A DNA stretch of 64,000 nucleotides, taken from positions 124,001 to 188,000 of the IMG/VR virus record IMGVR_UViG_3300032236_002285. One strand, given 5' to 3'. The position numbers and the translations under genes were made by a program. This document shows, one piece after another, positions 1,907-57,247 of this stretch. The notes under the pieces are model-generated. The model saw only the letters and a program-made list of their open reading frames with translations. It had not been told where the DNA came from and did no database searches. Each line of letters begins with the position of its first letter. Position 1 is the stretch's first letter.

Positions 1907-2779
1907 TTAGAAACAAGAAAGATATTTTTCTCCTCTATCACATAATATAGTAATGATATTACCTTCCATATCTGGGTATTTTTCTAACAATCTTTCTGAT
2001 GCTAAAATATTAGCACCTGAACTAATACCAACAAATAAACCTTGTTCTTTAGCTAATCTTCTAGCTCTTTCTTTAGCATCTTCTGTTGAAATAACCATAA
2101 TATCATCTACTTGTGTTAAATCAACTAAGAATTTAGAACCATCACCAATTCCTTGAATTCCGTGAAGACCTGGTTCACCACCAGACATAACAGGTGATTC
2201 TGCTGGTTCAACGGCTACTACTTTCATACCTGAGTGATACCATTTTAAAACACGAGAAGTACCCATAAGAGTACCTCCAGTTCCTGTTCCATCCACAAAT
2301 GCCGCAATTTTATTAGTATGTTGATGTAGGATTTCCACAGCAGTTCCTTTTTCATGTGCTTCAATATTCAAAGGGTTGTGAAATTGATTAGGATTAAAGT
2401 AACCATTTTCTTGAGCCATTTTATTTCTTAAAGCAATTGCTGCATCAAATTGACCATCTTCTACTTCGATTAGTTCAGCTCCATATAATCTTAACATTTG
2501 TTTTCTCTCATTGCTCATATTAGAAGGCATAACAATTATACATTTATAACCTCTTTCTGCTGCTAAGAAGGCAAAAGCAATTCCAGAGTTTCCTGATGTT
2601 GCTTCAATGATAGTATCACCTTTTTTAATTAAACCATTTTTTTCAGCGTGATTTATTATGTAAGAAGCCATTCTATCTTTTATCGAACCGCTTGGGTTTT
2701 GACCTTCAAACTTTGCGAAGATTCTTTCAGATATTTTAATTAAAGGAGTTTGACCAACGGTTTTAGATAGATTTGACAT
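1907..2779 (-). CDS. cysK: cysteine synthase (O-acetylserine sulfhydrylase, PLP)
   Basis: SGSIKDR PLP lysine, ATSGNSG, GTGGT, GIQGIG, GISSGAN motifs; start moved to ATG 2779 (MSNLSK) because an AATATATA motif lies at 2803-2810. Confidence 0.93.
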   Translation of the reverse strand: MSNLSKTVGQTPLIKISERIFAKFEGQNPSGSIKDRMASYIINHAEKNGLIKKGDTIIEATSGNSGIAFAFLAAERGYKCIIVMPSNMSNERKQMLRLYGAELIEVEDGQFDAAIALRNKMAQENGYFNPNQFHNPLNIEAHEKGTAVEILHQHTNKIAAFVDGTGTGGTLMGTSRVLKWYHSGMKVVAVEPAESPVMSGGEPGLHGIQGIGDGSKFLVDLTQVDDIMVISTEDAKERARRLAKEQGLFVGISSGANILASERLLEKYPDMEGNIITILCDRGEKYLSCF

Positions 2780-2838
2780 ATTATAGTTGTTTTTTTGTAT
2801 TTTATATATTAGTGACATGTAAGTTTATTTGAAAAAAA

Positions 2839-2869
2839 TTGATATTTTTCAAAAAAATTCATATATTTG
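2839..2869 (+). promoter_or_regulatory. Bacteroidota-type sigma70 promoter (-33 TTG, -7 TATATTTG)
   Basis: TATATTTG at 2862-2869, TTG 20 nt upstream, ATG 4 nt downstream. Confidence 0.65.
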
Positions 2870-2873
2870 CTGT

Positions 2874-3473
2874 ATGAATATATGGTTTACATCTGATACA
2901 CACTTTGGTCATACAAATATTGCGGGTCCTAAAGTTTCTAACTGGAAATCTGGTTATAGAGATTTTAACTCTGTTCATGAAATGAATATGGCTTTGGTTG
3001 AAGGTATCAATAAATATGTTAAAGAAGATGATATTCTCTATCATCTTGGTGATTGGAGCTTTGGGGGAGTTCATAATATTTTACAATTTAGAAATTATAT
3101 TGTCTGTAAAAATATACACCTGATTTTAGGTAATCATGACCAGCATATAACTGACAAGGAAATAAAGTATCATGATACTTCATTTAATCCAATTCAGCTT
3201 TTTTCATCAGTCCAAGATGTTTTACACTTGAAGTTGGGTAAAACTGAGTTGTTTCTTTCTCACTATTCTCATCGTGTTTGGTTAGGTAGTCATAAAGGTG
3301 TTATACATCTTTATGGTCACTCACATGGTTCAATTCCTGACTATGGAAAATCAATGGATGTTGGAGTTGATGTTGCTTTTAAGAGATTTGGTGAGTATCG
3401 TCCATTTAATATTGGTGACATAACAAACATTATGTCTAAAAGAGAAGTAGAAAAAATAGACCACCATGGATAG
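2874..3473 (+). CDS. calcineurin-like metallophosphoesterase
   Basis: SDTHFGH, LGDWSFG, GNHD, HGHSH motifs; likely ATG at 2874. Confidence 0.9.
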   Translation: MNIWFTSDTHFGHTNIAGPKVSNWKSGYRDFNSVHEMNMALVEGINKYVKEDDILYHLGDWSFGGVHNILQFRNYIVCKNIHLILGNHDQHITDKEIKYHDTSFNPIQLFSSVQDVLHLKLGKTELFLSHYSHRVWLGSHKGVIHLYGHSHGSIPDYGKSMDVGVDVAFKRFGEYRPFNIGDITNIMSKREVEKIDHHG

Positions 3474-3636
3474 TTTATATAATAGATTATCTATTCTAAA
3501 GATGATTCTTAATTCGAGTTATGGTGAAGGTAAGACCGTAACTAATGTATATGAGGAATCTTATAAAATAAGAAAAAAGATACACTCAATAAAAACTAGA
3601 AAAGAAAAAATTAAACGAATATTCTATTTGAAATAG
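3466..3636 (+). CDS. 56-aa micro-protein: PolB motif-B-like segment plus RKEKIKRIF helix
   Basis: Not in ORF track; manual translation MDSLYNRLSILKMILNSSYGEGKT...KTRKEKIKRIFYLK*; start overlaps upstream stop (ATGGATAG). Confidence 0.7.
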   Translation: MDSLYNRLSILKMILNSSYGEGKTVTNVYEESYKIRKKIHSIKTRKEKIKRIFYLK

Positions 3637-3656
3637 AAAAATAAAACAAGACTATC

Positions 3657-4526
3657 ATGAACGATGTGAAAGGATTTTGTAAGTTAATGGATATCAGTGT
3701 TCCGGATTACGAACACTTTGATTATTATATCCATCAACTATCAAAAACAGAAAAGTGGAAAAATATTTACGACCTTATTAAACTATTTGAAGACGCTGAA
3801 AGTAAATACGGTGATCTTTACGAATATCGTTTTAAGAAGGCAAATGAAATTATTGAATTTTTAAAAACAACAAGAGCTTATAATGAGCTTCAAGATGATA
3901 ATTTATTACCTGACTATCCAACAACTAAAAACTTTGAGTATTCAGATGATAAAAAATACATTTCTATTGATATTAGAAAGGCAAACTGGGTGGTTCTTAA
4001 AAAATATGACCCAGAGTTTGCACCGGAATTAGGAAATTCATATGAAGACTTTATAGCTAAATTTGATGTACCTGAAATATTCAATCATTCAAAACAATTA
4101 AGGCAGTTTATCTTTGGTAATATCAATCCAAAAAGACAAGGTAAAGCACAAAGAGTTATTATTGAGAGTTTACTGAATAAATATAAACACCTCAATTTAG
4201 AAATTGCTTGTATAAAAAATGATGAGGTTATTTATTCTTTTGATAGCTTTGAAAAAATTGAAGAAATCTTAAATACAATTGATAAAGATTTATTTAAAAC
4301 TAAACTTTTTATCGTTGAAAGAATAAAAGATTTTCGAATCAATACATACTTATCTGAAAAAGGTGAGAAATTACATAGAGAAATGGTAGGATGTAATGGT
4401 AATTTATTTTTCTTATATTTAAAGAAGTATGTGTTGAATGAGCCGATTGATATAAGAGATTTATATTTTAAAATGGATGGTAACCTAGCTATCTGGAATG
4501 TTGAAGGTTTAAAAGTAAGTCTGTAA
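3657..4526 (+). CDS. hypothetical protein
   Basis: 289-aa ORF; ISIDIRKANW and IKNDEVIY segments, function not recognised. Confidence 0.75.
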   Translation: MNDVKGFCKLMDISVPDYEHFDYYIHQLSKTEKWKNIYDLIKLFEDAESKYGDLYEYRFKKANEIIEFLKTTRAYNELQDDNLLPDYPTTKNFEYSDDKKYISIDIRKANWVVLKKYDPEFAPELGNSYEDFIAKFDVPEIFNHSKQLRQFIFGNINPKRQGKAQRVIIESLLNKYKHLNLEIACIKNDEVIYSFDSFEKIEEILNTIDKDLFKTKLFIVERIKDFRINTYLSEKGEKLHREMVGCNGNLFFLYLKKYVLNEPIDIRDLYFKMDGNLAIWNVEGLKVSL

Positions 4527-4528
4527 TT

Positions 4529-4786
4529 ATGTCTTTGTTGGTCAATGTTTATTATGGTGAAGATAAAAATCTTGTAGAATCTTTCTCAATTGAAATAGGA
4601 AGAAAAGTAACATCAATAGATGATGCTAGATTGTTGATAATTGAACATTTAGATAGTTTTTATTTTGATGTTAAATATAAAATAAATGTATTTTCATCTT
4701 TTGATGGTGATACAAGTATTAACTTAAATTTTGAAAAAGATATTTGTTTAAATAGAGAACTCTTAATAAGAAAAATATTAGAATGA
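4529..4786 (+). CDS. hypothetical protein, C-terminal RELLIRKIL helix
   Basis: 85-aa ORF in tight operon. Confidence 0.7.
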   Translation: MSLLVNVYYGEDKNLVESFSIEIGRKVTSIDDARLLIIEHLDSFYFDVKYKINVFSSFDGDTSINLNFEKDICLNRELLIRKILE

Positions 4787-5412
4787 TTGATATATTTGAT
4801 AAAAAGCCTATTAATCTGACAAAAGTAATTTGTCACTCTGGTGGTGCTCTCGGTTCTGACACCTTTTGGGAAACTGAAGGTGCTCTTTACGGAGTTACCA
4901 CCAGAGCTTATTCGTATAAAACAAAGAATCATATATCACCTAATAAGATTGAAATATCAGATGATGATTATAAAGAAGGTGTTATAGAAGTTAATAAAGC
5001 AAATAAGTGGCTTAATCGATATGGGATTCATAAGTATATGAATCTTTTAGCACGCAACTGGGCTCAAGTTAAATACTCTGAACAGATTTTTGCCATTGGT
5101 ACAATTATCAAACCTGGTGATAAAAATACAAAGGGTTACTATAATAAAGGCAAGTATGATATGGTCGATGGTGGTACTGGATATGCCGTTATGATGGGTA
5201 TTAATAATAAAAGAGAAGTATTTGTTTTTGACCAAATAAGAAATAAATGGTTTAGATGGTCTTATTCAACACTTCAGTTTGTTGAAATGAAAGAAGTCCC
5301 TACTATTGATGTTCAAAACTTTGCTGGTATTGGAACAAGAGAAATTCAAGCCAATGGTATTCAAGCCATCAAAGATGTTTATGAAAATACATTTAATAAA
5401 AATAAAAAATAA
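4783..5412 (+). CDS. SLOG superfamily (DprA/YspA-like) protein
   Basis: HSGGALGSD, GGTGYAV and FAGIGTRE motifs. Confidence 0.65.
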   Translation: MIDIFDKKPINLTKVICHSGGALGSDTFWETEGALYGVTTRAYSYKTKNHISPNKIEISDDDYKEGVIEVNKANKWLNRYGIHKYMNLLARNWAQVKYSEQIFAIGTIIKPGDKNTKGYYNKGKYDMVDGGTGYAVMMGINNKREVFVFDQIRNKWFRWSYSTLQFVEMKEVPTIDVQNFAGIGTREIQANGIQAIKDVYENTFNKNKK

Positions 5413-5414
5413 AA

Positions 5415-5882
5415 ATGAAAACAATCCTAACAAAAGAGGGTAAGGAAAAACTTCAAGAGGAATTAAACTTTTTAATGACTACTGAGAAAAGTCGTGTTAT
5501 AAATGACTTAGCTGAGGCTCGTGAAAGTGGAACTCTAGAAGAAAACACACAATATTTGATTGCTAAAGAAGAATATGAAAAGGTTCAAAAAAGAATTGAA
5601 AAAGTTCAATCTATCTTATCAAATGTTGTAGTAGTTGATGCTTCTAATATTAAAACTGACAAAGTTGCTATTTTAACAACGGTTAAAGTTTTGAATATGG
5701 GTAGTAACAAAGAAATGACATTTAAAATTGTGCCGGAAAATGAGATAGATGTTAAAACAAGTAAAATATCAACAAGTAGTCCAATAGGTGCGGGACTTTT
5801 TGGAAAAGTATTAGGTGATATTTGTGATATTAAAACACCGGCTGGTTTATTAAAATTTAAAATATTAGAAATAAGTATATGA
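5415..5882 (+). CDS. greA: transcription elongation factor GreA homologue
   Basis: LTKEGKEKLQEEL...AREsGTLEENTQY..AKEE coiled coil; C-term IVPENE...ISTSSPIGAGLFGK..GD...KTPAG. Confidence 0.92.
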   Translation: MKTILTKEGKEKLQEELNFLMTTEKSRVINDLAEARESGTLEENTQYLIAKEEYEKVQKRIEKVQSILSNVVVVDASNIKTDKVAILTTVKVLNMGSNKEMTFKIVPENEIDVKTSKISTSSPIGAGLFGKVLGDICDIKTPAGLLKFKILEISI

Positions 5883-6280
5883 TAATAAGCTTTGATTTTG
5901 ATGGAACTTTAGTAGATGAGTTTGGTGGTCACCCATCAAATAGTCAAAAAGAAGAAATTCAAGGACTCGCTAAGAAGTATATTAGTTTAGGACATGAAGT
6001 AATTATTATTACTAAACGATTTGGTCCAGAAAATGCAGATAAAGGTATCAAAAATGAACATTTAGAAGTTCAACATCTGGCTAATAAGTTGGGTATTCAA
6101 AAGGTTTACTTTACTAATCGTGAAATGAAATTTTCATATATTATTAACTTGAAAGTTGATAGACATTTTGAAAATGATGATTATGAGGTTTCTTTAATTA
6201 ATCAGGTTTGTAAAGAAAAAGGCCACAACTGTTTAGTTGTTCCGGTAGAAGACCCTTATTGGAGAGATTTAATATATTAA
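5879..6280 (+). CDS. HAD-superfamily phosphatase-like
   Basis: SFDFDGTL motif I, IIITKR motif II, HFEND. Confidence 0.7.
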   Translation: MIISFDFDGTLVDEFGGHPSNSQKEEIQGLAKKYISLGHEVIIITKRFGPENADKGIKNEHLEVQHLANKLGIQKVYFTNREMKFSYIINLKVDRHFENDDYEVSLINQVCKEKGHNCLVVPVEDPYWRDLIY

Positions 6281-6282
6281 AA

Positions 6283-6654
6283 ATGAATAAAACAAATTTT
6301 ATAGAGTTTATTAAAGAGTTAGGATTTGCGCAAGTTTGGCAGACAAATCCTAACTATTTTAGTTTAACAACTGACGTGATTGGTCTCGCTAATCAAAATT
6401 ATCAAGCTTTTTGTGACCAATTAAACGTTCATCTTGATGATGAAAATGAATTGGCACAATTATCACTCTCACAACTGAGTACTCATACGAGTGCTGGTAA
6501 AAGTTTTGGTAGATTTGACTTAAAAACATTTGGTGAACCAGGTGATTTTCAGATGCAGATCTTTATGAGTTTTGTGAAAGGTGCTTTTAAGAATCCACCA
6601 AATAATATAATTCAATATATGAGAGATAAAAAAATCAAAAGTATTCTAAAATAA
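6283..6654 (+). CDS. hypothetical protein, C-terminal RDKKIKSIL helix
   Basis: ORF track 6259..6654; likely ATG 6283. Confidence 0.7.
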   Translation: MNKTNFIEFIKELGFAQVWQTNPNYFSLTTDVIGLANQNYQAFCDQLNVHLDDENELAQLSLSQLSTHTSAGKSFGRFDLKTFGEPGDFQMQIFMSFVKGAFKNPPNNIIQYMRDKKIKSILK

Positions 6655-6679: not shown

Positions 6680-7066
6680 ATGAATTATGATCAAGAAATA
6701 ATAATTATAGAAATGACACCTTTTATATTTGAAGATGGTAATACTTACTATTTTAAAATAGTTAAAAGAGGTTCTTCTAATGATTATCATGATCTTTTTG
6801 TTTATGAAAAAATCAAAACAGAAACCAAAAATATCTTTGGTAGAGTAAAAATTGATGAGTGTTTCAATAAGATAAACAAAAGTCCTGAGCTCGTATCTAC
6901 AAGTTTAGATACGAATGAAATTAAAAGAAATATTAAAAAAATATTGATTGCTACTAAAGCTAACCACCGATTAAAAAATTGGGATGGTTTTGTTGGTGAC
7001 ATACCTAATGATGTTAAAACGGCTCTTAAAAGAGAGAGTTCTTTGAAAAACATTTTAGGTGAATAA
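6680..7066 (+). CDS. hypothetical protein, C-terminal RESSLKNIL helix
   Basis: 128-aa ORF. Confidence 0.7.
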   Translation: MNYDQEIIIIEMTPFIFEDGNTYYFKIVKRGSSNDYHDLFVYEKIKTETKNIFGRVKIDECFNKINKSPELVSTSLDTNEIKRNIKKILIATKANHRLKNWDGFVGDIPNDVKTALKRESSLKNILGE

Positions 7067-8970: not shown

Positions 8971-9042
8971 GGTCGGGTGACCGAGTGTTTTAGGTGGAGG
9001 CCTGCAAAGCCTTTAACGGTGGTTAGAATCCATCCCCGACCT
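8971..9042 (+). tRNA. tRNA-Cys (GCA), CCA not encoded
   Basis: Acceptor GGTCGGG/CCCGACC, D stem ACC/GGT, anticodon stem GAGGC/GCCTT with loop CTGCAAA (GCA at 9004-9006), T stem GGTGG/CCATC, discriminator U73 as expected for Cys. Confidence 0.92.
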
Positions 9043-9056
9043 CTAATTTTATATTA

Positions 9057-28267: not shown

Positions 28268-30181
28268 ATGATTTTTAGTTACAATACATTTTTGAGACCG
28301 GTAACACCAACTGATAATAATATTCAAATATTAGATAATAATGGTGTTGTTGTTTATACAATAAACCCATTTTCTATAGGAACTACAAGAGTTTCAAATA
28401 ATGTTTTAGAAATATCTTTTAAAAGTGGTAAAACAATACCTCTTCAATTTTCTTCTCAAAATGAAGCTAAAGTGGCTTTAAGTTTACTTCAGTCACAAAT
28501 TGATATACTTTTAACAAAGACTCCAACCGTTATTGATACTCAAATTAAAAACTACATTGAATATGTAGTTAGTTTAAGTAGCTCTTCTGGTACATCAGGT
28601 AGCTCAGGTTCAAGTGGTTCTTCAGGTGTTGATGGTACATTTTATGGTTCGTCAGGCTCTTCCGGTATTAATGGTACTTCAGGTATTAATGGTACTTCAG
28701 GAGTTAATGGCACCTCTGGTCATAATGGTACCTCAGGTGCTAACGGTACATCGGGATCTGATGGTACATCCGGACACAATGGGTTAAATGGTAGCTCAGG
28801 TACATCGGGGACATCAGGCATTTCTGATATTTTACATGGTACATCTTCTACTTATCTTTCGGTTCCAGATGTTGAAGAGTTTGTATTTTTAACAACACAA
28901 CCTGGTTTAGGTTTTTCAACAAATCAAACAGTTGTTGTTTTTGATGATGTTAATGGTTACGCTAACTATTATTATATTGATGGTGATGATACTTTAGGTA
29001 TATTTTATGGTTATATTGACTCTTATGATCAGCAAACAGGTGACATGAGTATTTACACAGCTTTATCTTTTAATGTTGGTTCAACATCAAGTAATTGGGG
29101 TATCAATTTAGCTGGTATACCTGGATCGAGTGGTTCAACTGGTGTATCTGGTACATCTGGTTCAAGTGGCACATCTGGTCACTCTGGTACTTCTGGTTCA
29201 AGTGGATCATCAGGGACTTCTGGTTTAAATGGCTCTTCGGGTACATCTGGATCAAGTAGCACATCTGGATCAAGCGGCACATCGGGTAGCTCAGGATCAA
29301 GTGGGTCAAGCGGATCATCAGGAACTACATCAACTGGTCCTCAAAACTATACTCAAGTTTTAGGATCAAAAGTAACTGGTGTAACAACCACAGGCGTCAC
29401 TCTTGTTTCTGGTAGTATTACTACAAATGGTGGACCTGTTAGTATTACAGCTACTGGTGATGCAAACCCTCAAGGTGGCACAGCTTGGGTAAGATTGCAA
29501 ATATACAGAAATAGCACACCAGTTGGTCAAATAATACAAGCTGAGAATGGTTCAAATTTAAATATACCTTATTGTGTTACATTTATTGATACACCAAGTG
29601 CAGGTACTTATACCTATTCAATGAGAACTGTTAGTGGTATAGCTGGAACATTGGACTTTGGTGAAGTTAATGGTCCAACACTAACTATGATTGAATTAAC
29701 GGGTTCTGGTACATCTGGATCATCAGGTTCTGCTGGTACATCAGGTAGTTCGGGTACTTCACCATCAACAGATTTAACATTAAGTGGAAATTTAGTTGTT
29801 AATGGTCAATCAACATTTACAGAGGTAACAGAGGTTATCAATCAAATACCAGCTGGTGCTACTGCTTCAACTGTTACATATGATTTCAGTAATGGTGATA
29901 TTTGGTATCATGGAACAGCTTCTCAAAACTTTACAGCTAATTTTATAAATGTACCTACTACAACTTGGAGAACAATTACTACTACAATTTTAATTAATCA
30001 AGGTCCTACTGCTTATATACCAACTACTGTAAAAATAAATGGTACTGCTTCTACTGTAAAATGGGCAGGTGGAACTGCTTCAGGTACAGCTAATGGAGTT
30101 GATATAATTGGATTTAGTTTTATCTATACAAATAGTGGTATTCCTACTCAAGTGTTAGGTCAAATAAATTCATTTAGTTAA
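28268..30181 (+). CDS. tail fibre-like protein with Gly-X-Y (SGT/SGS/NGT) repeats
   Basis: Three tracts of SGTSGSSG / NGTSG triplet repeats separated by globular domains. Confidence 0.7.
   Translation: MIFSYNTFLRPVTPTDNNIQILDNNGVVVYTINPFSIGTTRVSNNVLEISFKSGKTIPLQFSSQNEAKVALSLLQSQIDILLTKTPTVIDTQIKNYIEYVVSLSSSSGTSGSSGSSGSSGVDGTFYGSSGSSGINGTSGINGTSGVNGTSGHNGTSGANGTSGSDGTSGHNGLNGSSGTSGTSGISDILHGTSSTYLSVPDVEEFVFLTTQPGLGFSTNQTVVVFDDVNGYANYYYIDGDDTLGIFYGYIDSYDQQTGDMSIYTALSFNVGSTSSNWGINLAGIPGSSGSTGVSGTSGSSGTSGHSGTSGSSGSSGTSGLNGSSGTSGSSSTSGSSGTSGSSGSSGSSGSSGTTSTGPQNYTQVLGSKVTGVTTTGVTLVSGSITTNGGPVSITATGDANPQGGTAWVRLQIYRNSTPVGQIIQAENGSNLNIPYCVTFIDTPSAGTYTYSMRTVSGIAGTLDFGEVNGPTLTMIELTGSGTSGSSGSAGTSGSSGTSPSTDLTLSGNLVVNGQSTFTEVTEVINQIPAGATASTVTYDFSNGDIWYHGTASQNFTANFINVPTTTWRTITTTILINQGPTAYIPTTVKINGTASTVKWAGGTASGTANGVDIIGFSFIYTNSGIPTQVLGQINSFS
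28585..28820 (+). repeat. coding Gly-Ser-Thr triplet repeat tract 1 (tracts 2 and 3 at about 29120-29330 and 29705-29765)
   Basis: Degenerate 9/18-nt units such as AATGGTACTTCAGGT. Confidence 0.85.
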
Positions 30182-39660: not shown

Positions 39661-40395
39661 TTACTTAAATTTAGATTTGATATCATCAAGATCTTTCATT
39701 CTACTTTCATGTGTAGCACTTAACAAAGTATAACTACTTGAGTAAGTACCAGCTGAATATGTTCCGTGTGTATTACCATAAATATCAATAACTTCATAAT
39801 TATCAATAATAATAGCATAACCACCTCTATCAAGAGTTAATGGCGCACTTAAAGTATTCATTCTATTAAAAGGTCTAGAAGTTGAATCTGGACTAAACCA
39901 ATTAGGTAAAACATAATCAGACAAACCAACCTTAATATTACCTGCTAATGTATAAACTATTAAATTACTTTCAACTGGGTCACAAAGTTCAGCCGCCCAG
40001 AAAATACCATTATTATCTAAACACCATTTATTAACTACATTATTACCCATCATCTCTAATAACTCATGACATACACATTGAGCAACGGTAAATGTTGAAT
40101 TATCTTTATAAAGAACAGCACCACCATAATTCAATATTGTTTTAGCAAATACTTTAGCATAAGCTCTGCCAGATGTTTCATCATGATAACCTAAAGCACC
40201 TGGGTAATCAGTAAGATCCATTAAAAATATACTATTGTTTGGATAGTTTCTACCAGTACCTATAACTAATTGTGTAGGTGCCAATCCCCAATCATTACAA
40301 ACATTTGTAAGAAATGAATTTATAGCTTTAACCATATTTTGTAGATTAGTTGTATTAACAACCGTGCTTTGATTGAATATTGTATAGTTTATCAT
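39661..40395 (-). CDS. zincin-like metalloprotease candidate
   Basis: ALGYH, CHELLEM, ELCDPV; canonical HExxH not intact. Confidence 0.45.
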   Translation of the reverse strand: MINYTIFNQSTVVNTTNLQNMVKAINSFLTNVCNDWGLAPTQLVIGTGRNYPNNSIFLMDLTDYPGALGYHDETSGRAYAKVFAKTILNYGGAVLYKDNSTFTVAQCVCHELLEMMGNNVVNKWCLDNNGIFWAAELCDPVESNLIVYTLAGNIKVGLSDYVLPNWFSPDSTSRPFNRMNTLSAPLTLDRGGYAIIIDNYEVIDIYGNTHGTYSAGTYSSSYTLLSATHESRMKDLDDIKSKFK

Positions 40396-42794: not shown

Positions 42795-43061
42795 ATGGGT
42801 TCAATGAAAGAAATAGCAATTAGAGATTATATTTCTAAAATAGACTTCAAGCACGATGATTGGAAGCTTTCTCAATTAAAAGAAGACATGCGTAGATTCT
42901 TAGGTGAAGAACCAGGAATTGAAGTTGTTTATAAAAAAGATGTAATGGTGAATGAAGTATCCGGAGAATCTAAAGAATTCTTAGATATTGATAAAATTCA
43001 AATTGTATTCACTGATACAGATGACAGATTTAAAAAAATAGAATTTACATTAGGTGTTTAA
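42795..43061 (+). CDS. hypothetical protein
   Basis: 88 aa, AATATATA 42770-42777 upstream. Confidence 0.75.
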   Translation: MGSMKEIAIRDYISKIDFKHDDWKLSQLKEDMRRFLGEEPGIEVVYKKDVMVNEVSGESKEFLDIDKIQIVFTDTDDRFKKIEFTLGV

Positions 43062-43284
43062 TATGAATTTTGAAAATTACTACTTAGATATACAAAAAAT
43101 ATCTCAAATACCTTCACTTGAAGATAGGGACCAAATACATAGATACTATATGGATATGCTTATTTTTTTTACTGATGGTTCTGGTAGAGAAAAAGTATCA
43201 CAATCAATTATGAAAACACTTATCAAATCTGGGTATTTAATTGATTCTCGTGATGAAAAATTAGGTGAATTGTTAAATGGATAA
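43054..43284 (+). CDS. hypothetical protein, C-terminal RDEKLGELL helix
   Basis: 76-aa ORF containing IFFTDGS. Confidence 0.65.
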   Translation: MFNMNFENYYLDIQKISQIPSLEDRDQIHRYYMDMLIFFTDGSGREKVSQSIMKTLIKSGYLIDSRDEKLGELLNG

Positions 43285-43675: not shown

Positions 43676-45424
43676 ATGTTAATTAGTGAATTAGGAATTA
43701 GAGGATTCAAGTCTTATGGCAATAACGAACAAGTATTAAAATTAAACACAGAAAAAGGAGAATTAATTCTCCTTGTTGGAAATAATGGAGCTGGTAAATC
43801 ATCTCTTTTAGATTCCTTCGATTACACACTTTATGGTAAAGTTAGAGGTCGTAAAAAGAAATGGGCCACTTTATCAACACTTCCAAACAGAATTAACGGT
43901 GAATTACTTAATAGAATTAAATTTAATTCTTTAGGTACCGACGTTGAAATCAAACGTGGTATTTCACCAAGCGTATTAGAACTCATTGAAAATGGAGTAA
44001 CCAATGAAAGAGCTGGTAAAGGAAACATTGATGAAAAGATTGAAAAGTATATCGGTATGGATATTGAAACTTTCAAATCATTTATCTCAATGTCTATCAA
44101 TGACTTCAAAAACTTTATCTCTTTATCAAATGAAGAAAAACAACTTCTTTTAGACAAGTTATTTAACTTAGAAGTTATCAATATATTAAATGGTATCTTA
44201 AAAGATATTGCTAAGAGTAATAAAACCAAAGCCGCTTCTTTTGATGCTGAAATTAGAACTTTAGATGACTCTATAGCTTCTATTCAAAGGTCTATTGATA
44301 AAGCCATTGAAAGACAAAAAGAAGAAGCCAGACTAGCCTTAGAACGTGAAAAAGAAGATATTCAATCAGAGATTGATAGAATCACAAATGAGATGAATTC
44401 CAGAAAAGATGATTATAAGTCTTTGAAAGAAAAGATGGATAAAATCAAAGAAAAAGATTCTGAACTTTCTGATGAGATGGATAAAGAAAAAAGACAACTT
44501 ATCAACTGTCAGAATGATATTAAGAATGTTCAAAAAGAATTAGATTTGTATGATTCTGGTAAATGTCCAACTTGTAAAACAGATTTTGATTCAGTTCACT
44601 TTGCTAATTTAAGAACGGCTTTAGAAGAAAAGAAATTAGGCTTTGAAAATATCAAAGCTGAAATTGAAGCCAATGTTACTAAAGTAAGAGAAAGGCAAGC
44701 TAAGTTAAAATCTTTATCAGAAACTACAACAACTACTTTTAATGATTTAAGTTATTTATTGAAGAATTATAAATCAGAGATTGATAAATTAACTCAAAAG
44801 AAAGCTAGTCAAACTGCACCGGTTAATACTACACCTTCTGTCGATATTCAAGAGTTTAAAAATACAATTGATGAACTTGAAGAAAAGAAAGTCATCAGTA
44901 CTGATAAAATTACTGAGTGTAAAGAAAAAGATCTTTACTACAAAGAGTTAAATAGAATTTTTGGTGAAGATGGTGTTAAGAAATCTATCATTTCTGGTAT
45001 TATCAAACCAATCAATCACTTTATTGCTGAGAATATCAAAAAGATGGGTTTACCATTTGAAGTTAAGTTAGATGAGACTTTTACAGCTGAGATTAAACAA
45101 TTAGGTTCTCAAATTGAACACGATTCTTTATCAACTGGTGAAACTAAAAAAGTAAATATTAGTATCTTAATTGCTTACTTGAAATTGATTAGAACTAAAC
45201 GTCATATCAATATTCTCTTCTTAGACGAGGTTTTCTCATCTATTGATATAGAAGGTATAGATTCTATTTTAGCACTCTTAAAATCGTTTGCAAACGATTA
45301 TAACATCAATATCTTTGTTGTTCACCATGCTATTTTGAATCAAGAGATGTTTGATAGAATATTGAAGATTAACAAAGAAGTCTTTTCTTCAATAGAAGAA
45401 GTAAATCTTAACTATGGAAATTAA
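43676..45424 (+). CDS. SbcC/Rad50/gp46-like SMC ATPase
   Basis: GNNGAGKS Walker A, long coiled coil, CPTC zinc hook, LSTGE signature, LFLDE Walker B, VVHH. Confidence 0.92.
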   Translation: MLISELGIRGFKSYGNNEQVLKLNTEKGELILLVGNNGAGKSSLLDSFDYTLYGKVRGRKKKWATLSTLPNRINGELLNRIKFNSLGTDVEIKRGISPSVLELIENGVTNERAGKGNIDEKIEKYIGMDIETFKSFISMSINDFKNFISLSNEEKQLLLDKLFNLEVINILNGILKDIAKSNKTKAASFDAEIRTLDDSIASIQRSIDKAIERQKEEARLALEREKEDIQSEIDRITNEMNSRKDDYKSLKEKMDKIKEKDSELSDEMDKEKRQLINCQNDIKNVQKELDLYDSGKCPTCKTDFDSVHFANLRTALEEKKLGFENIKAEIEANVTKVRERQAKLKSLSETTTTTFNDLSYLLKNYKSEIDKLTQKKASQTAPVNTTPSVDIQEFKNTIDELEEKKVISTDKITECKEKDLYYKELNRIFGEDGVKKSIISGIIKPINHFIAENIKKMGLPFEVKLDETFTAEIKQLGSQIEHDSLSTGETKKVNISILIAYLKLIRTKRHINILFLDEVFSSIDIEGIDSILALLKSFANDYNINIFVVHHAILNQEMFDRILKINKEVFSSIEEVNLNYGN

Positions 45425-45744: not shown

Positions 45745-47154
45745 TTAGCAGTCGTAACAATCTACTGTTCCTCTACCACTACAATTATCACATTCTACTG
45801 TACCATCTCCGTTACATTCTGGACAATCTGTTTCATTTCCCTCTTCATCTTCAATGTGACCTAATCCTTCACAATTTGAACAATCAACACTTCCATCTCC
45901 ACCACAATCGTCACATTCCATTCTACCCGTTCCGCCGCAAGTATCACAAGGTCTAACATAGTCACCACCTGTATCTTCTAAGAAATAACAACCACCAGTA
46001 TCTTCACTTGAAATAGTTTTTTTACGAGGATTGAAATATTTAAGTGTATCTAAGTAAGGGAAATTATCCATACTAGCATCAGTTAAATTAACCGTTAAAT
46101 CTAAATTAACTCTACTTCCATCCGGTGCTACAGCTTGATTACTATCTGAACTATTATTATATTCTTTATAATACCAACCATTTTCTTTAGCATAATCTCT
46201 GAATAATTGAACATCTGAATCATTTACCGTATAAACTCTGTCTAAGAATTCTTTACCATCTCTTAACTTCCAAAGTAAAGCTCTACCAACAATTTTTTCA
46301 GTATCATCCATTGATTTGTAAATAACTAAACCAACTTCTGGATTAGCAGTGTAAACTTCTAACCAACTATCTGGAGCACCAGCCATACAAGACGAACCTA
46401 AAGTCCCACTTCTTTGATAATAATTTGAGTTATGATACCAGTGAGCAATATCAGAACCCCTAACAACTTCAAAGTAAGAGAATTTATCATTCATCTTATC
46501 AATAGTAGCTTTATATAAATTTACAAATTGTTCAAAATCTCTATCAGCAAATGTAGTAATACCAGCAGCTCTTAAAAGTGCTCTCATAGCTCTACCTACT
46601 TTTACTTCTTGTCTGTTTGTTGACCAAACTTTTTTAATTCTCTCATCAACAGCTCTTATCTTTTCAACATTATAAACACCTTGACCAACATCATTACCTG
46701 ATTGGTCTTTGAATTTAACCCAAGCATAAGTTTTACCTGATTGTTCAGATGTTACTCTAGCAATAACCTCACCTAAATCTGTAGATTGTGGTTTATAAGG
46801 CTCAGAGCCTTCTTCAAATGTATAACCTAGTTGAGTAAATAATTTTGCATTTGAATCTTTGTGTTTTAACCAACCACCACCAGAACCGATAAATCTAACT
46901 ACTTCTTTAGTATCACCTAAAATCTCTTGAGCTTTTCTATCAGGAGTAAAAGTAATTGTATCGTTTTTTGTGAACTCAATATCAAGGTAATTAGCTTGAA
47001 CATTGTAGTCATTATTTTCAGCATCTAAAATAGCTTTCGCTACAGGGCTGTCAATCTTAGTCATTGCTTTTCTGAAGTTATCGGAATAAACAACATTAGA
47101 TTCTAGAATAAATTCTAGGTTTTCGTTTATAAAATCTGAATATTTTTTAATCAT
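45745..47154 (-). CDS. SCM/RALLW/PYLDT family protein with capsid-targeting-like N-terminus and C-terminal CxxCxGxG zinc finger
   Basis: MIKKYSDFINE; LGSSCM, GRALLW, FLDRVY, FPYLDT; six CxxC units at C-terminus. Confidence 0.8.
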   Translation of the reverse strand: MIKKYSDFINENLEFILESNVVYSDNFRKAMTKIDSPVAKAILDAENNDYNVQANYLDIEFTKNDTITFTPDRKAQEILGDTKEVVRFIGSGGGWLKHKDSNAKLFTQLGYTFEEGSEPYKPQSTDLGEVIARVTSEQSGKTYAWVKFKDQSGNDVGQGVYNVEKIRAVDERIKKVWSTNRQEVKVGRAMRALLRAAGITTFADRDFEQFVNLYKATIDKMNDKFSYFEVVRGSDIAHWYHNSNYYQRSGTLGSSCMAGAPDSWLEVYTANPEVGLVIYKSMDDTEKIVGRALLWKLRDGKEFLDRVYTVNDSDVQLFRDYAKENGWYYKEYNNSSDSNQAVAPDGSRVNLDLTVNLTDASMDNFPYLDTLKYFNPRKKTISSEDTGGCYFLEDTGGDYVRPCDTCGGTGRMECDDCGGDGSVDCSNCEGLGHIEDEEGNETDCPECNGDGTVECDNCSGRGTVDCYDC

Positions 47155-47184
47155 TTTCAACTATGTTATATTTTAAGATATAAG

Positions 47185-47224: not shown

Positions 47225-47413
47225 ATGCTAGAAATTAAAGTAGAAGGTGTTGGTATTGAAAAAGCCTTAAAAACACTTAAAAGAAAATTTGACAAAACTA
47301 AAACTCTTAGACAATTAAGAGATAGAAAAGAATTTGTTAAAAAATCAGTTAAAAGAAGAGCTGAAATAAACAAAGCTAAATATGTTCAAGAAAAGTTTGG
47401 TAACAACGATTAA
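47225..47413 (+). CDS. rpsU: 30S ribosomal protein bS21
   Basis: IEKALKTLKRKFDKTKTLRQLRDRKEFVKKSVKRR...KAKY resembles Bacteroidota bS21. Confidence 0.92.
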   Translation: MLEIKVEGVGIEKALKTLKRKFDKTKTLRQLRDRKEFVKKSVKRRAEINKAKYVQEKFGNND

Positions 47414-47693
47414 GAATTTATTCAGTGATAATCAAAGAACATTTGATTTAGGTAAACTACAAAAGGTTGGTTTTATAAAACCTTTAGAAGATCTATCTGG
47501 TTGTCCTAATTGTAAAAGTAAAAACATATCTTGGAAGTTCTTTATACCAGTAGATGGCTCAAAACCTACACAACCATCTTTATCTATCTGTAAAGATTGT
47601 GGATATCAAGATATAAGAGGTGAATTTGAAAAAACAAACAAATCATTACTTAGAGAAAAGAAAATTAATAAGATATTAGATGGGATTCAATAA
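47382..47693 (+). CDS. zinc-ribbon protein with REKKINKIL helix
   Basis: CPNC...CKDC. Confidence 0.7.
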   Translation: MFKKSLVTTIKNLFSDNQRTFDLGKLQKVGFIKPLEDLSGCPNCKSKNISWKFFIPVDGSKPTQPSLSICKDCGYQDIRGEFEKTNKSLLREKKINKILDGIQ

Positions 47694-47895: not shown

Positions 47896-48592
47896 AAATT
47901 ATTATGCTATTCTTGGAGTTGATAATAACTCTGATGAAAAGACTATTAAAAAAGCTTATTATAAATTATCATTTACACATCACCCTGATAAGAATGGCGA
48001 TCCTATAGTTTTTGGTGAAATGACCGAGGCATATGATGTTCTTTGTTCTGATAAAAGAAAAGATTATGATGTTAAAAGTAGATTTGGTAACAACTATAAC
48101 GAATATTTTGAGTTATTTGATATTAAAATAGACTTTGACTATACTAAGGAAAAATCTAACTATGAAAAATTTAAGAAAAATGAGGTATTGGATATCTATA
48201 TTAACATAGATGAGACTTTTGATGGCACCTTAGAATATGAAAGATGGGTTAAATGTAAAACTTGTGATGGTACTGGTAAGGATCTTTCCGCTAAAATTGT
48301 TATTAAAGACAATGATGGTAATATTATAAAAACTTTTGACGCTGATGATGGTTGTGATTTCTGTGAAGGTTCTGGTAAAGACTATAAAGGAGATGATTGT
48401 AATTTCTGTCAGGGTAAGGGTAAAGTAGGTTTAACACCTTGTAAAAAATGTAATGGAGAAAAAAGAATTTTAGGAAAGCAAAAGTTATCTGGTATTAAAT
48501 TAACCGGAGATGAAACTAAAATAGAATCCATGGGTAATTGCTCTAAAGATATAGCTGGTATGGTTGGTTATCTTTTATTAAAAAAGAGTTAA
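47882..48592 (+). CDS. dnaJ: DnaJ-like co-chaperone (J domain plus zinc finger, truncated C-terminus)
   Basis: NYYAILGV...KKAYYKL...HPDKN; four CxxCxGx repeats. Confidence 0.85.
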   Translation: MNLNKNYYAILGVDNNSDEKTIKKAYYKLSFTHHPDKNGDPIVFGEMTEAYDVLCSDKRKDYDVKSRFGNNYNEYFELFDIKIDFDYTKEKSNYEKFKKNEVLDIYINIDETFDGTLEYERWVKCKTCDGTGKDLSAKIVIKDNDGNIIKTFDADDGCDFCEGSGKDYKGDDCNFCQGKGKVGLTPCKKCNGEKRILGKQKLSGIKLTGDETKIESMGNCSKDIAGMVGYLLLKKS

Positions 48593-51500: not shown

Positions 51501-51813
51501 AGTGGAAAAAACTTTGAGTAGTAGAAGGTGCTGTAGAAGAAGCAGTCAAACCATTAGAATAGTTTAACTGATCTGTCCAAGACCCAGGACTAACCGAAAA
51601 TGAGCCATGTGCTGAATATAAATTCCAAGTATGTGTTACAAATTGATATGTCTTTTTAGTACTATATGAATAATTAGTACCATAGTGTGTAATTGGATAA
51701 ATTGATGATACTGCCGCTGCTCCTATTGCTGAAGTATTTACTTGCATTCTGCCTGGAGCAGGTGATGCTGAGTAAATCCAATAATTATAACCTGTTGGTA
51801 TTGGTGCTGGCAT
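48589..51813 (-). CDS. 1074-aa putative structural protein with W-x-x-G repeats
   Basis: GIWENGVWNSGW, WLSGGFLNGYFTGIWNYG, HWIDGIFDGGHF. Confidence 0.7.
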   Translation of the reverse strand: MPAPIPTGYNYWIYSASPAPGRMQVNTSAIGAAAVSSIYPITHYGTNYSYSTKKTYQFVTHTWNLYSAHGSFSVSPGSWTDQLNYSNGLTASSTAPSTTQSFFHYSTPTSPVSSTAQVTYKANGDFGNTASHLPGITDISVNEIDFGLQGFSYYKVTGSELQPITSNSLGWYYDKSADVYNWYDRVTGSPSLISDATSAGYLPVGGQNNSKGQSVGYRLNNFLIKFIPYSYFNLYFDYQNISNFPLKIYTSYTQPSNAASDWATIVTNTFTPPSDAVLIASLTQSFSGTYSSYNYYIPESFYSLRGNQYLYIVGPFVGASASGTTYSSVYLRNLRIEGGYHPGNNRQYVMSNYVTYSTITGLTGATYTTFVGAGNTVNATSSLINPGISKIYAKIGNGTFKAGIWENGVWNSGWRVDNQMHTFYNIYQFFGYNKDKRWRVQISGPTSSVANFNIGDNVSIGNIVAIDINEERKLLKGYYTIINKTDTTIVVEFDNNFPIRRIEKDSDNHRIYVTKNVWLSGGFLNGYFTGIWNYGLFKGYPLITEMYDSHWIDGIFDGGHFNTTLYTVPNFSGTLYQSGSLGLTFSSPHGLVVGDLITVNKDNKLVNPQYDGDHYVTSVVNNYQVVIDVDYGNDLLPETGKITIDKSKGLLQRVDFRSNNISSVTSNSSLESNAVFIYNSWIDVTYNSSYASNIGKPQTLTNYLSNRTYSENNLYGYITNDVLESNSTFRDSFSKTVRKYRLGTKYKIFGDFIGDSGNFTDSWASNYGTYSSSSESTFVKYGWTFSRWDDSSLTFSRTEDIGINSIIGEELKVQSIGNGGILDITPFSDIFVENKIYEDVQRFRYTKIDFDLVTYSNNISQYRYDVVGSGKYAFTVLKHSPYSYKLIGLNALLPEPPIHFNNLNYVNRSASLSSAVYGSTASVTVNATYLPVYQNVNHITTPKKKKTEYFYNKRNLAMHFYGISPALTDTAEYVIDNLHFYEVDMIPFFQYFTDDNINQGIQIPFQGISPFIDYSNANFNFIDNISIGLDSINTQNSNTVVSGVGAGIGSAPTGGTTIYTTPISVPTGPISSGF

Positions 51814-56974: not shown

Positions 56975-57247
56975 ATGAAAAAGGAATATTACAGTTACGA
57001 TTGTTACAAGTCCGCTTCATCATATGGTGATTTTATTAAGTCATTAGGCACATATACCTATGATGATGAAACTGACTCTATCGAATATAATGGTTATATT
57101 GATAGTTCTAGTGTTTATTCAGATTTAACAAGTCAAATAATGAAGTACTATAAAGATAGAGAAACACCTGAACAAAAAGCTATCCGTGAAGCTAAAGAAA
57201 AAGCTGAAAAAAGAAATAATACTATTAATCAAATTTTAGGTGAATAA
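56975..57247 (+). CDS. hypothetical protein, C-terminal RNNTINQIL helix
   Basis: 90-aa ORF. Confidence 0.7.
   Translation: MKKEYYSYDCYKSASSYGDFIKSLGTYTYDDETDSIEYNGYIDSSSVYSDLTSQIMKYYKDRETPEQKAIREAKEKAEKRNNTINQILGE

What the first reader, a model, noticed from the sequence alone, without database searches (positions are those of the whole stretch)
3466..4526. PolB motif B (KxxxNSxYG) as a stand-alone 56-aa ORF, next to a protein with possible palm motifs
LKMILNSSYG is an exact K-x3-N-S-x-Y-G match. The next gene has ISIDIRKANW and IKNDEVIY, loosely like polymerase palm motifs A and C, with no motif B that I can see. Two readings: a polymerase-fingers decoy (fits the mimic family), or, more speculatively, a split polymerase-like enzyme with the fingers helix supplied in trans.
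Basis: partly seen in the sequence, partly recalled or inferred. Interest (0 to 1): 0.6.

Follow-up and report, generated by a model that had tools for sequence, protein, structure and literature searches.

The report
Mini PolB-like enzyme plus motif-B micro-protein
In a roughly 476-kb phage, a conserved 56-residue protein carrying an exact DNA-polymerase "motif B" lies next to a 289-residue protein that folds like a stripped-down family-B DNA polymerase, but the larger protein has its own motif B equivalent and does not appear to need the small one.

Summary
ORF 3466-3636 encodes KMILNSSYG, the only K-x3-N-S-x-Y-G in six frames of the window (chance about 0.04 over the coding residues). It is a genuine gene: dN/dS is 0.12-0.6, and the motif is the one block kept in every copy of this gene found in related phages.

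The neighbour, 3657-4526, belongs to a large, unannotated, virus-only family of about 960 clusters at 50% identity. Its AlphaFold model (pLDDT 96.5) matches family-B DNA polymerase palm-plus-fingers best, by Foldseek and by an independent all-against-all aligner. The closest folds are uncharacterised giant-virus proteins.

It carries K146-x3-Q-x2-F-G154 where the fingers sit, between Asp105 (motif A position) and Asp189-Glu190 (motif C position).

The split-enzyme reading is not supported:
- The 289-aa family is far wider than the micro-ORF.
- Its fingers stub is the same with or without the micro-ORF.
- A variable gene often separates the two.
- The interaction prediction gave no verdict.

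A relative has a complete T4-type PolB, itself split into two distant genes, so the 289-aa protein is an extra enzyme. The decoy reading remains untested.

The parts
2829..3473 (+). Metallophosphoesterase gene (context). Its TAG stop overlaps the micro-ORF start (ATGGATAG).
   Evidence: Pfam Metallophos_2 at 1.4e-4 (below the family's curated cut-off) and phrog_547 phosphoesterase at 9e-45. It precedes the micro-ORF in all relatives that have one, even where a different phosphoesterase paralogue is present.
3466..3636 (+). Micro-ORF of 56 aa, a basic (pI about 10) helix-loop-helix protein.
   Evidence: (dN/dS 0.12-0.6). AlphaFold model pLDDT 87 with helices 2-16 and 23-54. Related copies stop at the same place with TAG, TGA or TAA.
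3499..3525 (+). KMILNSSYG, an exact PolB motif B pattern at the C-terminal end of helix 1 and into the loop.
   Evidence: Unique in the window. K12 and N16 are invariant, Y19 and G20 at least 90% conserved, S17 is S or T. The motif is kept in L014 and L018, where the rest has diverged. hhalign against a T4-type PolB profile aligns it on motif B with P = 3.4e-4.
3598..3624 (+). C-terminal tail RKEKIKRIF, of a type shared with at least 9 other genes in the window.
   Evidence: R-x3-[IL]-x2-[IL]-[LFY] lies within 5 residues of the C-terminus in 10 of 72 genes, against 0.11 expected. It is conserved at the peptide level, with synonymous changes, whatever lies downstream.
3657..4526 (+). 289-aa stand-alone family-B-polymerase-like protein: N-terminal helical domain, RRM-type palm, short fingers stub, small C-terminal region.
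   Evidence: 435 close homologues and 959 clusters at 50% identity. Model pLDDT 96.5, pTM 0.90. PolB is the top match in Foldseek PDB, VIA second look (Z up to 8.2, model 85-246 on KOD-type PolB 385-608) and the VIA wide search. Giant-virus proteins match at TM 0.69-0.80.
3960..3989 (+). Motif A position: strand 100-106 ending in Asp105, followed by helix 109-116 (ISIDIRKANW).
   Evidence: Secondary structure. S103, D105, A109 and N110 are at least 90% conserved. A low-stringency hhalign run pairs this block with T4 gp43 motif A. This is a weak alignment and is used only for register.
4089..4136 (+). The protein's own motif-B-like block, SKQLRQFIFGNINPKR, in the insert between the palm helices.
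   Evidence: R149 is invariant. S145, K146, Q150, G154 and P158 are at least 90% conserved. The K-to-G spacing of 8 equals that of PolB motif B. The block is the same in genomes with and without the micro-ORF.
4212..4235 (+). Motif C position: beta-hairpin 182-186/190-195 with Asp189-Glu190 at the turn (IKNDEVIY).
   Evidence: strands. D189 and E190 are at least 90% conserved.
4529..4786 (+). 85-aa gene of unknown function, found next to the 289-aa gene in close relatives. It ends with the shared tail type.
4783..5412 (+). 209-aa DprA/SLOG-like protein, the most constant neighbour of the 289-aa gene.
   Evidence: phrog_768 at 1.8e-9. It lies downstream of the 289-aa gene in loci L001-L024, where the 289-aa protein is as little as 47% identical to the window's, and was not found next to it in the more distant loci L025-L031.

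Best explanation
These are two neighbouring but separable genes. They sit in one same-strand, tightly packed run of genes, probably co-transcribed, in a roughly 476-kb phage.

Gene 3657-4526 encodes a self-contained, miniature family-B-polymerase-like enzyme. It has an RRM-type palm. The metal-binding carboxylates are in the canonical places: Asp105 at the end of strand 1, and Asp189-Glu190 on the strand 2-3 hairpin. A roughly 40-residue stub replaces the long fingers and carries its own motif B equivalent (K146-x3-Q150-x2-F153-G154, plus R149 and K159/R160). There is no exonuclease domain and only a small thumb-like end.

I infer that it is an active accessory nucleotidyl transferase or polymerase, for repair, end-filling or primer extension. 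I infer that it is not part of the replicase, because a relative carries a complete T4-type PolB elsewhere.

Gene 3466-3636 encodes a small basic helical hairpin. Its functional core is a PolB-motif-B-like helix end. Its C-terminal helix carries a docking or targeting tail shared with many other small genes of this phage.

My committed reading is that the small protein is an accessory modulator built on, or converged on, the fingers motif of a PolB-type polymerase. It is not a missing piece that the 289-aa enzyme needs.

Shown here: fold, motif positions, conservation, distribution. Inferred: catalytic activity, any contact between the two proteins, and the target of the small protein.
For: - Fold of the 289-aa protein: pLDDT 96.5. 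Foldseek PDB top 50 is almost entirely PolB, best E 7e-5. In the VIA second look, model 85-246 aligns on archaeal PolB 385-608, which is palm plus fingers, at Z 7.5-8.2. In the independent VIA wide search, 10 of the top 12 chains are PolBs.
- Family: 959 representative clusters, with conserved D105, K146, R149, Q150, G154, D189 and E190. Giant-virus relatives match at TM 0.69-0.80. One BFVD match at TM 0.56 is annotated as a DEDDy exonuclease and two as R3H-domain proteins.
- Self-sufficiency: the fingers stub and acidic residues are unchanged in genomes lacking the micro-ORF. The micro-ORF was found only where the 289-aa protein is at least 64% identical to the window's, plus one 55% lineage. 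The slot between the phosphoesterase gene and the 289-aa gene is variable, holding a 109-aa gene or other ORFs.
- Extra enzyme: relative LR756502 has the 289-aa homologue and also a complete T4-type PolB, encoded as two separate genes at about 254 kb and about 120 kb.
- Micro-ORF is real: dN/dS 0.12-0.6, motif invariant, hairpin model pLDDT 87, tail conserved at peptide level and shared by 10 of 72 genes.
Against: - No sequence profile links the 289-aa family to PolB (Pfam, PHROGs, NCBIfam and PDB profiles are all blank; hhalign probability 5%).
- Structural Z scores of 7-8 are middling, and TM normalised to the query is only about 0.3 against full-length PolBs.
- The residue-level equivalence of D105, K146 and D189/E190 rests on strand order and aligned ranges, not on a superposition I could inspect.
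- Glu in place of the second motif C Asp, and Gln/Phe in place of Asn/Tyr, are unusual for PolB.
- An exact, invariant motif B sitting one or two genes from a PolB-like palm has a chance of roughly 1e-3. That is my own estimate: 2.3e-6 per position times about 300 neighbouring residues. This argues for some functional or evolutionary link that the 'separable genes' reading does not explain.
Confidence: 0.55

Rival explanations
1. Split enzyme. The 56-aa hairpin supplies a canonical motif B (Lys, Asn, Tyr for the incoming nucleotide) in trans to the short-fingered 289-aa palm, forming a two-subunit polymerase in this sub-clade.
For: - The palm fold is confirmed and the fingers are cut down to a roughly 40-residue stub.
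- The motif is the only family-wide invariant block of the micro-ORF.
- In the window and in L015 the two genes abut, with a 20-nt gap and an ATGA overlap respectively.
- Splitting of PolB within the fingers occurs in this phage group: in LR756502 the break between the two PolB genes lies between the two fingers helices.
Against: - The 289-aa protein keeps its own K-x3-Q-x2-F-G in every lineage, identical with or without the micro-ORF.
- The family is present in giant viruses, Salicola phage SCTP-2 and many phages with no micro-ORF nearby.
- A 109-aa gene usually lies between the two.
- The micro-ORF follows the phosphoesterase gene rather than the 289-aa gene. In L018 it lies 1.3 kb upstream of the 289-aa gene.
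Confidence: 0.15
2. Decoy or modulator of the replicative polymerase. The micro-protein is a PolB-fingers-derived fragment that competes with, or regulates, a full PolB-type polymerase of the phage, a competitor phage or the host. It would be one member of a set of small proteins that each display a catalytic motif of a core enzyme on a common tail.
For: - Two other micro-ORFs in the window (57803-57976 and 57969-58157) share the RKEKIKRI-type tail.
- LR756502 has a 49-aa ORF that the PolB HMM hits on motif A (E 1.4e-4) and that ends in a similar basic helix.
- hhalign places the micro-ORF on PolB motif B with P = 3.4e-4.
Against: - Similarity to PolB vanishes when the nine motif columns are removed (P = 0.14 and 0.28, out of register).
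- The PDB profile search and Foldseek find no PolB.
- No target is identified. The window phage's own PolB could not be retrieved.
- The motif resemblances of the other two micro-ORFs rest on my memory and were not tested.
Confidence: 0.15
3. Convergent motif. The hairpin has nothing to do with polymerases. N-S-x-Y-G is simply a helix cap and turn with a packing Tyr. The protein is a small adaptor targeted by its amphipathic basic tail, to a membrane or a hub protein, possibly working with the upstream phosphoesterase.
For: - The fold search returns only generic helical hairpins. The top hit is the ExoVII small subunit at TM 0.85 but E 0.86.
- The flanks show no PolB signal.
- Its start overlaps the stop of the phosphoesterase gene.
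- The tail is generic in this genome.
- A reader scanning for many motifs had about a 4% chance of such a hit per window.
Against: The full nine-residue pattern, including the hydrophobic positions, matches T4-type motif B (KILINSLYG) very closely, for example KIIINSNYG in L018. The invariant Lys four residues before Asn is not needed for a helix cap. The adjacency to a PolB-like gene is also unexplained.
Confidence: 0.15

Closest known systems
Family B DNA polymerases (Pfam PF00136; archaeal KOD/9N/Tgo, Pol alpha/delta, E. coli Pol II, T4/RB69 gp43, phi29)
   Same: PolBs are the best structural match for residues 85-246, and in several alignments for 1-289. The order of elements is the same: strand ending in Asp, helix, fingers insert with K-x7-[aromatic]-G, helix, acidic beta-hairpin.
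   Different: The protein is 289 aa against 570-1200 aa. It has no exonuclease or N-terminal domains, a fingers stub of about 40 residues and a tiny thumb. Its motifs read S-x-D-x3-A-N, K-x2-R-Q-x2-F-G and D-E, rather than D-x2-SLYPS, K-x3-NS-x-YG and DTDS. There is no HMM-level similarity.
Uncharacterised giant-virus proteins (BFVD: Hyperionvirus A0A3G5ABH4, Klosneuvirus 'R3H domain protein' A0A1V0SKG9, Barrevirus, Clandestinovirus, Medusavirus 'DEDDy 3'-5' exonuclease' A0A3T1CWG1)
   Same: They share the same overall fold (TM 0.56-0.80, 17-24% identity, E down to 4e-16). They probably belong to the same family.
   Different: Some are longer (268-695 aa) and are annotated by UniProt name with R3H or exonuclease modules. 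None has a described function. I could not fetch their sequences, so the domain order is unverified.
Split gene 43 (gp43A/gp43B) of some T4-related phages (recalled from Petrov, Karam and co-workers, not checked here), and the split PolB found here in LR756502
   Same: This is a PolB delivered as separate polypeptides, with the break inside the fingers.
   Different: Those pieces are colinear halves of a normal PolB and are hit strongly by a T4-type PolB HMM (3e-42 and 4e-28). Neither the micro-ORF nor the 289-aa protein is hit (no window hits).
Herpesvirus UL8, a helicase-primase accessory subunit with an inactivated PolB-like fold
   Same: It appears among the structural matches (9ut1_C, 9nn2_C and BFVD UL8 homologues). 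It shows that PolB-like folds are reused as accessory proteins.
   Different: UL8 is about 750 aa. From memory, it lacks the catalytic carboxylates. The 289-aa family keeps its acidic residues almost invariant.
Exodeoxyribonuclease VII small subunit XseB
   Same: It is the top fold match of the micro-ORF model: a 60-residue helical hairpin, TM 0.85, rmsd 1.0 Å.
   Different: The E-value is 0.86. No Pfam match was found for the micro-ORF at E up to 1. Helical hairpins are generic.

Membership tests
Family B DNA polymerase (for the 289-aa protein) | Significant match to the PolB sequence family (Pfam DNA_pol_B or PDB PolB sequences) | tested here: not met
   No Pfam, PHROGs, NCBIfam or PDB-profile hit, for the protein or for 75 family members. 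hhalign against a T4-type PolB profile gives probability 5%.
Family B DNA polymerase (for the 289-aa protein) | Right-hand palm whose closest structural relatives are PolBs | tested here: met
   Foldseek PDB, VIA second look at Z 7.5-8.2 over 150-250 residues, and the VIA wide search with 10 of the top 12 chains being PolBs. The Z values are middling, so this counts as fold-level support only.
Family B DNA polymerase (for the 289-aa protein) | Motif A Asp at the end of palm strand 1 and motif C acidic pair on the beta-hairpin | tested here: inconclusive
   D105 and D189-E190 sit at those positions by strand order and are at least 90% conserved. The canonical strings DxxSLYPS and DTDS are absent, and I could not inspect a residue-level superposition.
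Family B DNA polymerase (for the 289-aa protein) | Motif B K-x3-N-S-x-Y-G on the second fingers helix | tested here: inconclusive
   The variant K146-x3-Q-x2-F-G154 has the same spacing and lies in the fingers insert, but it does not match the canonical residues.
Family B DNA polymerase (for the 289-aa protein) | 3'-5' exonuclease and N-terminal domains | tested here: not met
   The protein is 289 aa. Residues 1-80 are a helical domain that aligns only to KOD residues 258-380.
Family B DNA polymerase (for the 289-aa protein) | Template-directed DNA synthesis | not testable with these tools
   This needs a biochemical assay.
PolB fingers fragment (for the micro-ORF) | Exact motif B at the C-terminal end of a helix | tested here: met
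   KMILNSSYG at residues 12-20. The helix ends at N16 in the model. The motif is invariant across the family.
PolB fingers fragment (for the micro-ORF) | Similarity to PolB extending beyond the motif | tested here: not met
   The parts before and after the motif give P = 0.28 and 0.14, out of register. No PolB appears in the PDB profile search, Foldseek or tblastn against phage genomes.
Two-gene split PolB (micro-ORF plus 289-aa protein) | Pieces colinear with one PolB and always found together | tested here: not met
   The T4-type PolB HMM hits neither gene, although it hits both PolB genes of LR756502. The 289-aa gene occurs without the micro-ORF in L001, L017, L020-L034 and, by the BFVD fold matches, in giant viruses.
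Two-gene split PolB (micro-ORF plus 289-aa protein) | Physical complex of the two products | tested here: inconclusive
   The interaction prediction returned no verdict. This is evidence neither for nor against binding.

The most novel reading that the evidence does not exclude
This phage group makes a class of micro-proteins. Each displays one catalytic motif of a core DNA enzyme on a common basic C-terminal tail. Examples are PolB motif B here, a PolB motif A-like 49-aa ORF in LR756502, and possibly helicase- and terminase-like motifs in 57803-57976 and 57969-58157. They would act in trans on polymerase-type enzymes: as a detachable fingers element for the mini-PolB, as a stand-in when the replicative PolB is interrupted at motif B by the GC-rich hairpin element seen in 36 of 67 related PolB loci, or as decoys.
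Probability: 0.15. Interest if true: 0.85.

Novelty: new variant of a known kind. Interest (0 to 1): 0.6.

Why it matters
If the 289-aa protein is active, it would be one of the smallest right-hand, PolB-like polymerases known. It would also give a function to a family of about 960 clusters, shared by huge phages and giant viruses, that no database currently names.

A conserved micro-protein whose only invariant block is a polymerase active-site motif is an unusual thing to find. It gives a direct bench test of whether polymerase fingers can be supplied, or jammed, in trans.

The follow-up also turned up three other things in this phage group:
- a replicative PolB encoded as two distant genes;
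- a hairpin element inserted specifically in its motif B coding sequence;
- a genome-wide C-terminal tail.

Each of these deserves its own study.

Tried and rejected
1. Interaction prediction of the pair gave no verdict (score 0.00, partner fold uncertain). It counts neither for nor against binding.
2. TAG read-through of the micro-ORF. In the window it would end at a TGA overlapping ATG 3657, and the ~476-kb length resembles the TAG-recoding Lak phages. Rejected because related copies stop at the same position with TGA or TAA, and because recoding TAG does not improve coding density more than recoding TGA does.
3. A PolA-like reading of the 289-aa motifs (SID..AN as DYSQIELR, DE as HDE). Rejected because the K-to-G spacing fits PolB rather than PolA, and PolB outranks the one PolA hit, Pol nu at Z 5.7.
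4. An alternative register suggested by hhalign, pairing G-x2-G-N at 245-250 with the PolB YGALGN. Rejected: probability 5%, and it conflicts with the structural ranges.
5. Sequence-family searches with Pfam, PHROGs, NCBIfam, PADLOC and PDB, on single proteins and on alignments, found nothing.
6. tblastn of the micro-ORF against 50,697 phage genomes found no polymerase.
7. Foldseek on the micro-ORF model found only generic hairpins.
8. Three collection scans to fetch the window phage's own PolB never returned its contig. I therefore could not test whether its replicative PolB keeps motif B.
9. A scan of bacterial genomes found only 3 contigs, all from metagenome-assembled genomes and probably mis-binned phage. 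The family looks viral.
10. Literature searches found no description of this family or of the hairpin element.
Full report
**Setting**

The window is 29% G+C, densely coded, and almost every gene ends in TAA. The 289-aa protein of the finding is encoded identically on IMG/VR contig UViG_3300032236_002285, which is 476 kb (locus L007). The only phage-genome record with DNA similarity is the 642-kb uncultured phage LR756502.1. So this is a huge phage. The contig length recalls the 476-kb Lak genomes described in PMC8346664, but I did not establish that identity. I saw no sign of TAG recoding in this window.

**Check of the observation**

ORF 3466-3636 (56 aa) reads as reported. K-x3-N-S-x-Y-G occurs once in six frames of the window. 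From the amino-acid composition of the long ORFs, 0.048 occurrences are expected, and 4% of shuffles contain one.

The ORF is a real gene. A word-index search found 25 clusters of 54-64 aa. Contigs carrying homologues of the neighbouring gene carry the ORF in the same slot. Pairwise dN/dS is 0.12-0.60.

In the extended alignment the invariant or near-invariant positions are M1, L8, K12, N16, Y19, G20 and a basic C-terminal block. Two diverged copies show that the motif is the core. L018 scores only 19 bits against the family HMM but reads KIIINSNYG. L014 is missed by the HMM but reads KMQLNSIYG. Related copies end at the same position with TAG, TGA or TAA, so the TAG in the window is a true stop.

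AlphaFold gives a helical hairpin (pLDDT 87, helices 2-16 and 23-54). The motif spans the end of helix 1 and the loop.

**The neighbouring gene**

The 289-aa protein has 435 close homologues. In an exhaustive HMMER search it has 959 clusters at 50% identity with E up to 1e-3. None of Pfam, PHROGs, NCBIfam, PADLOC or PDB sequence profiles recognises it or its relatives.

With a 75-sequence alignment AlphaFold gives pLDDT 96.5 and pTM 0.90. Three searches agree on the fold:
- Foldseek against the PDB returns family-B DNA polymerases in nearly all of the top 50, best E 7e-5.
- The VIA second look aligns model 85-246 on archaeal PolB 385-608, which is the palm with its fingers. Several alignments cover 1-289. 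Z is 7.5-8.2.
- An all-against-48,161-chains VIA search that does not depend on Foldseek puts PolBs in 10 of its top 12 places. Small ferredoxin/RRM-like domains match only residues 97-222.

The Z values are middling. I therefore treat this as fold-level, not family-level, evidence.

Against predicted viral structures, the best matches are uncharacterised giant-virus proteins at TM 0.56-0.80. Two are annotated as R3H-domain proteins and one as a DEDDy exonuclease. Phage PolBs and herpesvirus UL8-type proteins follow. The family also occurs in Salicola phage SCTP-2. In bacterial genome collections it appears only in three contigs from metagenome-assembled genomes. It therefore looks viral.

**Motifs of the 289-aa protein**

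The model has the RRM-type palm order: strand 100-106, helix 109-116, an insert at 117-157, helix 158-175, hairpin 182-186/190-195, helix 198-207, strand 213-223. Polymerases of this fold bind their two metals through residues at the end of strand 1 and on the strand 2-3 hairpin. The fingers are inserted after strand 1 (as summarised in PMC7824862).

In this family those positions hold Asp105 and Asp189-Glu190, both at least 90% conserved.

The insert contains the best-conserved block of the family, S145-K146-x2-R149-Q150-x2-F153-G154-N-x-N-P-K-R. The distance from Lys to Gly is eight residues, as in PolB K-x3-N-S-x-Y-G and unlike PolA. Asn is replaced by Gln and Tyr by Phe. This equivalence rests on topology and aligned ranges. 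I could not inspect coordinates.

**Is it a split enzyme?**

Four results argue against an obligatory partnership.
1. Distribution. The micro-ORF is found only next to 289-aa genes that are at least 64% identical to the window's, plus one 55% lineage. It was not found within 4 kb in L001, L017 or L020-L034, and the 289-aa fold also occurs in giant viruses.
2. No compensating loss. The fingers stub and both acidic motifs are the same in genomes with and without the micro-ORF.
3. Gene order. Most relatives have a 109-aa gene between the two. LR756502 has an unrelated 108-aa ORF there and no micro-ORF. L017 and L018 have four or five small ORFs in the slot. The micro-ORF keeps its place after the phosphoesterase gene even where that gene is a different paralogue. 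The constant neighbour of the 289-aa gene is the downstream DprA/SLOG-like gene.
4. The interaction prediction gave no verdict, so it adds nothing either way.

In favour of some link:
- In the window and in L015 the two genes abut.
- The chance that an exact motif B falls within a gene or two of a PolB-like palm is of order 1e-3. That is my own arithmetic from the per-position rate.

**Is the micro-ORF derived from PolB?**

A profile of T4-type PolBs (built) aligns the micro-ORF on motif B with P = 3.4e-4. When the nine motif columns are removed, the flanks score P = 0.28 and 0.14 and fall out of register. The PDB profile search, Foldseek and tblastn find no polymerase. The resemblance is therefore confined to the motif, and homology is unproven.

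**What the relatives add**

I read the whole LR756502 genome and searched it with the PolB HMM.
- It encodes a complete T4-type PolB as two distant genes. A 515-aa product carries the exonuclease, motif A and the first fingers helix. A 474-aa product starts in the second fingers helix with KLVLNGSYG and continues through DTDS and the thumb.
- It also encodes the 289-aa homologue. The mini-PolB is therefore an additional enzyme, not a fragment of the replicase.
- It has a 49-aa ORF that the HMM hits on motif A and that ends in a basic helix.

I could not retrieve the window phage's own PolB. So the most interesting possibility remains open: that its replicative PolB lacks an intact motif B.

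**Conclusion**

The 'no motif B' premise and the obligatory split enzyme are not supported. The decoy idea is untested.

I commit, at 0.55, to two separable genes: a self-contained miniature PolB-like nucleotidyl transferase, and a small accessory hairpin protein whose conserved core imitates or descends from the PolB fingers motif.

Noticed in passing
window 3598-3624, 4529-4786, 6259-6654, 6680-7066, 43054-43284, 47382-47693, 56975-57247, 57247-57810, 57803-57976, 57969-58157: Ten of 72 genes end, within five residues of the C-terminus, with R-x3-[IL]-x2-[IL]-[LFY], for example RKEKIKRIF, REKKINKIL and REEVLNSIL. The expected number is 0.11 (Poisson P about 7e-17, for a pattern chosen after seeing the data). 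LR756502 genes end in the same way (...DKLSKILGD). In the micro-ORF the tail is conserved at the peptide level, with synonymous changes. It could be an amphipathic targeting or docking helix. From memory it resembles the MinD membrane-targeting end. It could also partly reflect the start region of the next gene.
   Followed up: partly
window 57803-57976 and 57969-58157: These two adjacent micro-ORFs (57 and 62 aa) share the RKEKIKRI-type tail with 3466-3636. The micro-ORF HMM hits them only through the tail (E 0.004 and 0.013). Their N-terminal halves contain DIVIVDYFTKL and LNSRQTGKSS. From memory these resemble a DnaB-type Walker B and a terminase Walker A. That resemblance was not tested.
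   Followed up: partly
LR756502.1: L043:8844-10388 (+) and L040:22486-23907 (-): The replicative T4-type PolB of this 642-kb relative is encoded as two genes about 130 kb apart. The break lies between the two fingers helices. The HMM E-values are 3e-42 and 4e-28.
   Followed up: yes
loci L052-L118, about 100-135 nt into the gene for the C-terminal PolB piece (locus positions 3103-3133): 36 of 67 related loci carry exactly one GC-rich perfect hairpin, C5...G5, with folding energy of -22 to -35 kcal/mol. It is inserted inside the sequence coding for motif B (KLVLNGSYG), at four or more different points. In the eight copies read in detail, a stop codon lies just before or within the stem and the reading frame often changes. 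No such hairpin occurs in the flanks of these loci, in the whole LR756502 genome or in the window. It could be a mobile element that is bypassed or spliced out, or it could split the gene further. I found no description of it in the literature searched.
   Followed up: partly
L048:33495-33641 (+) of LR756502.1: This 49-aa ORF contains MDYTSLYSNII, which the PolB HMM aligns on motif A (E 1.4e-4). It is followed by a basic helix, RRIAKIKRIL. It is a motif A counterpart of the window's motif B micro-ORF.
   Followed up: partly
L087:2854-4092 (+): The ORF holding the C-terminal part of the PolB piece begins with a stretch ending ...DILVHN, which looks like an intein C-terminal block (from memory). 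In L087, L103 and L112 the tblastn match to this PolB piece starts only at query residue 115, which would fit a large insert upstream, but only L087 was read. L088, L090 and L091 carry an extra roughly 560 nt inside the gene.
   Followed up: no
window, upstream of many genes (for example 22938, 27075, 32343, 39661-40395, 42795, 45745-47160, 48589-51813, 60088-60432): A recurring TTAATATATA-like element lies 10-35 nt upstream of start codons. It is probably a phage promoter.
   Followed up: no
window 3636-3657 compared with L002:2670-2999 and L006:2669-2998: A 109-aa gene present between the micro-ORF and the 289-aa gene in most relatives is absent from the window. The micro-ORF C-terminus changes from ...FNG/FDGR to ...FYLK. 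Database protein P0129 shares this form.
   Followed up: yes
window 1907-2818 (-), 5415-5882 (+), 8971-9043 (+), 28268-30181 (+), 43676-45424 (+): Other genes in the window include a probable cysteine-synthase-like PALP enzyme (the Pfam PALP hit is on the neighbouring gene in relatives), a GreA/GreB homologue, tRNA-Cys, a collagen-repeat protein and an SbcC/Rad50-like ATPase.
   Followed up: no
window 2829-2873: The listed TTG start of the phosphoesterase gene is probably too far upstream. The conserved metallophosphoesterase N-terminus begins at Met16 (ATG 2874).
   Followed up: no
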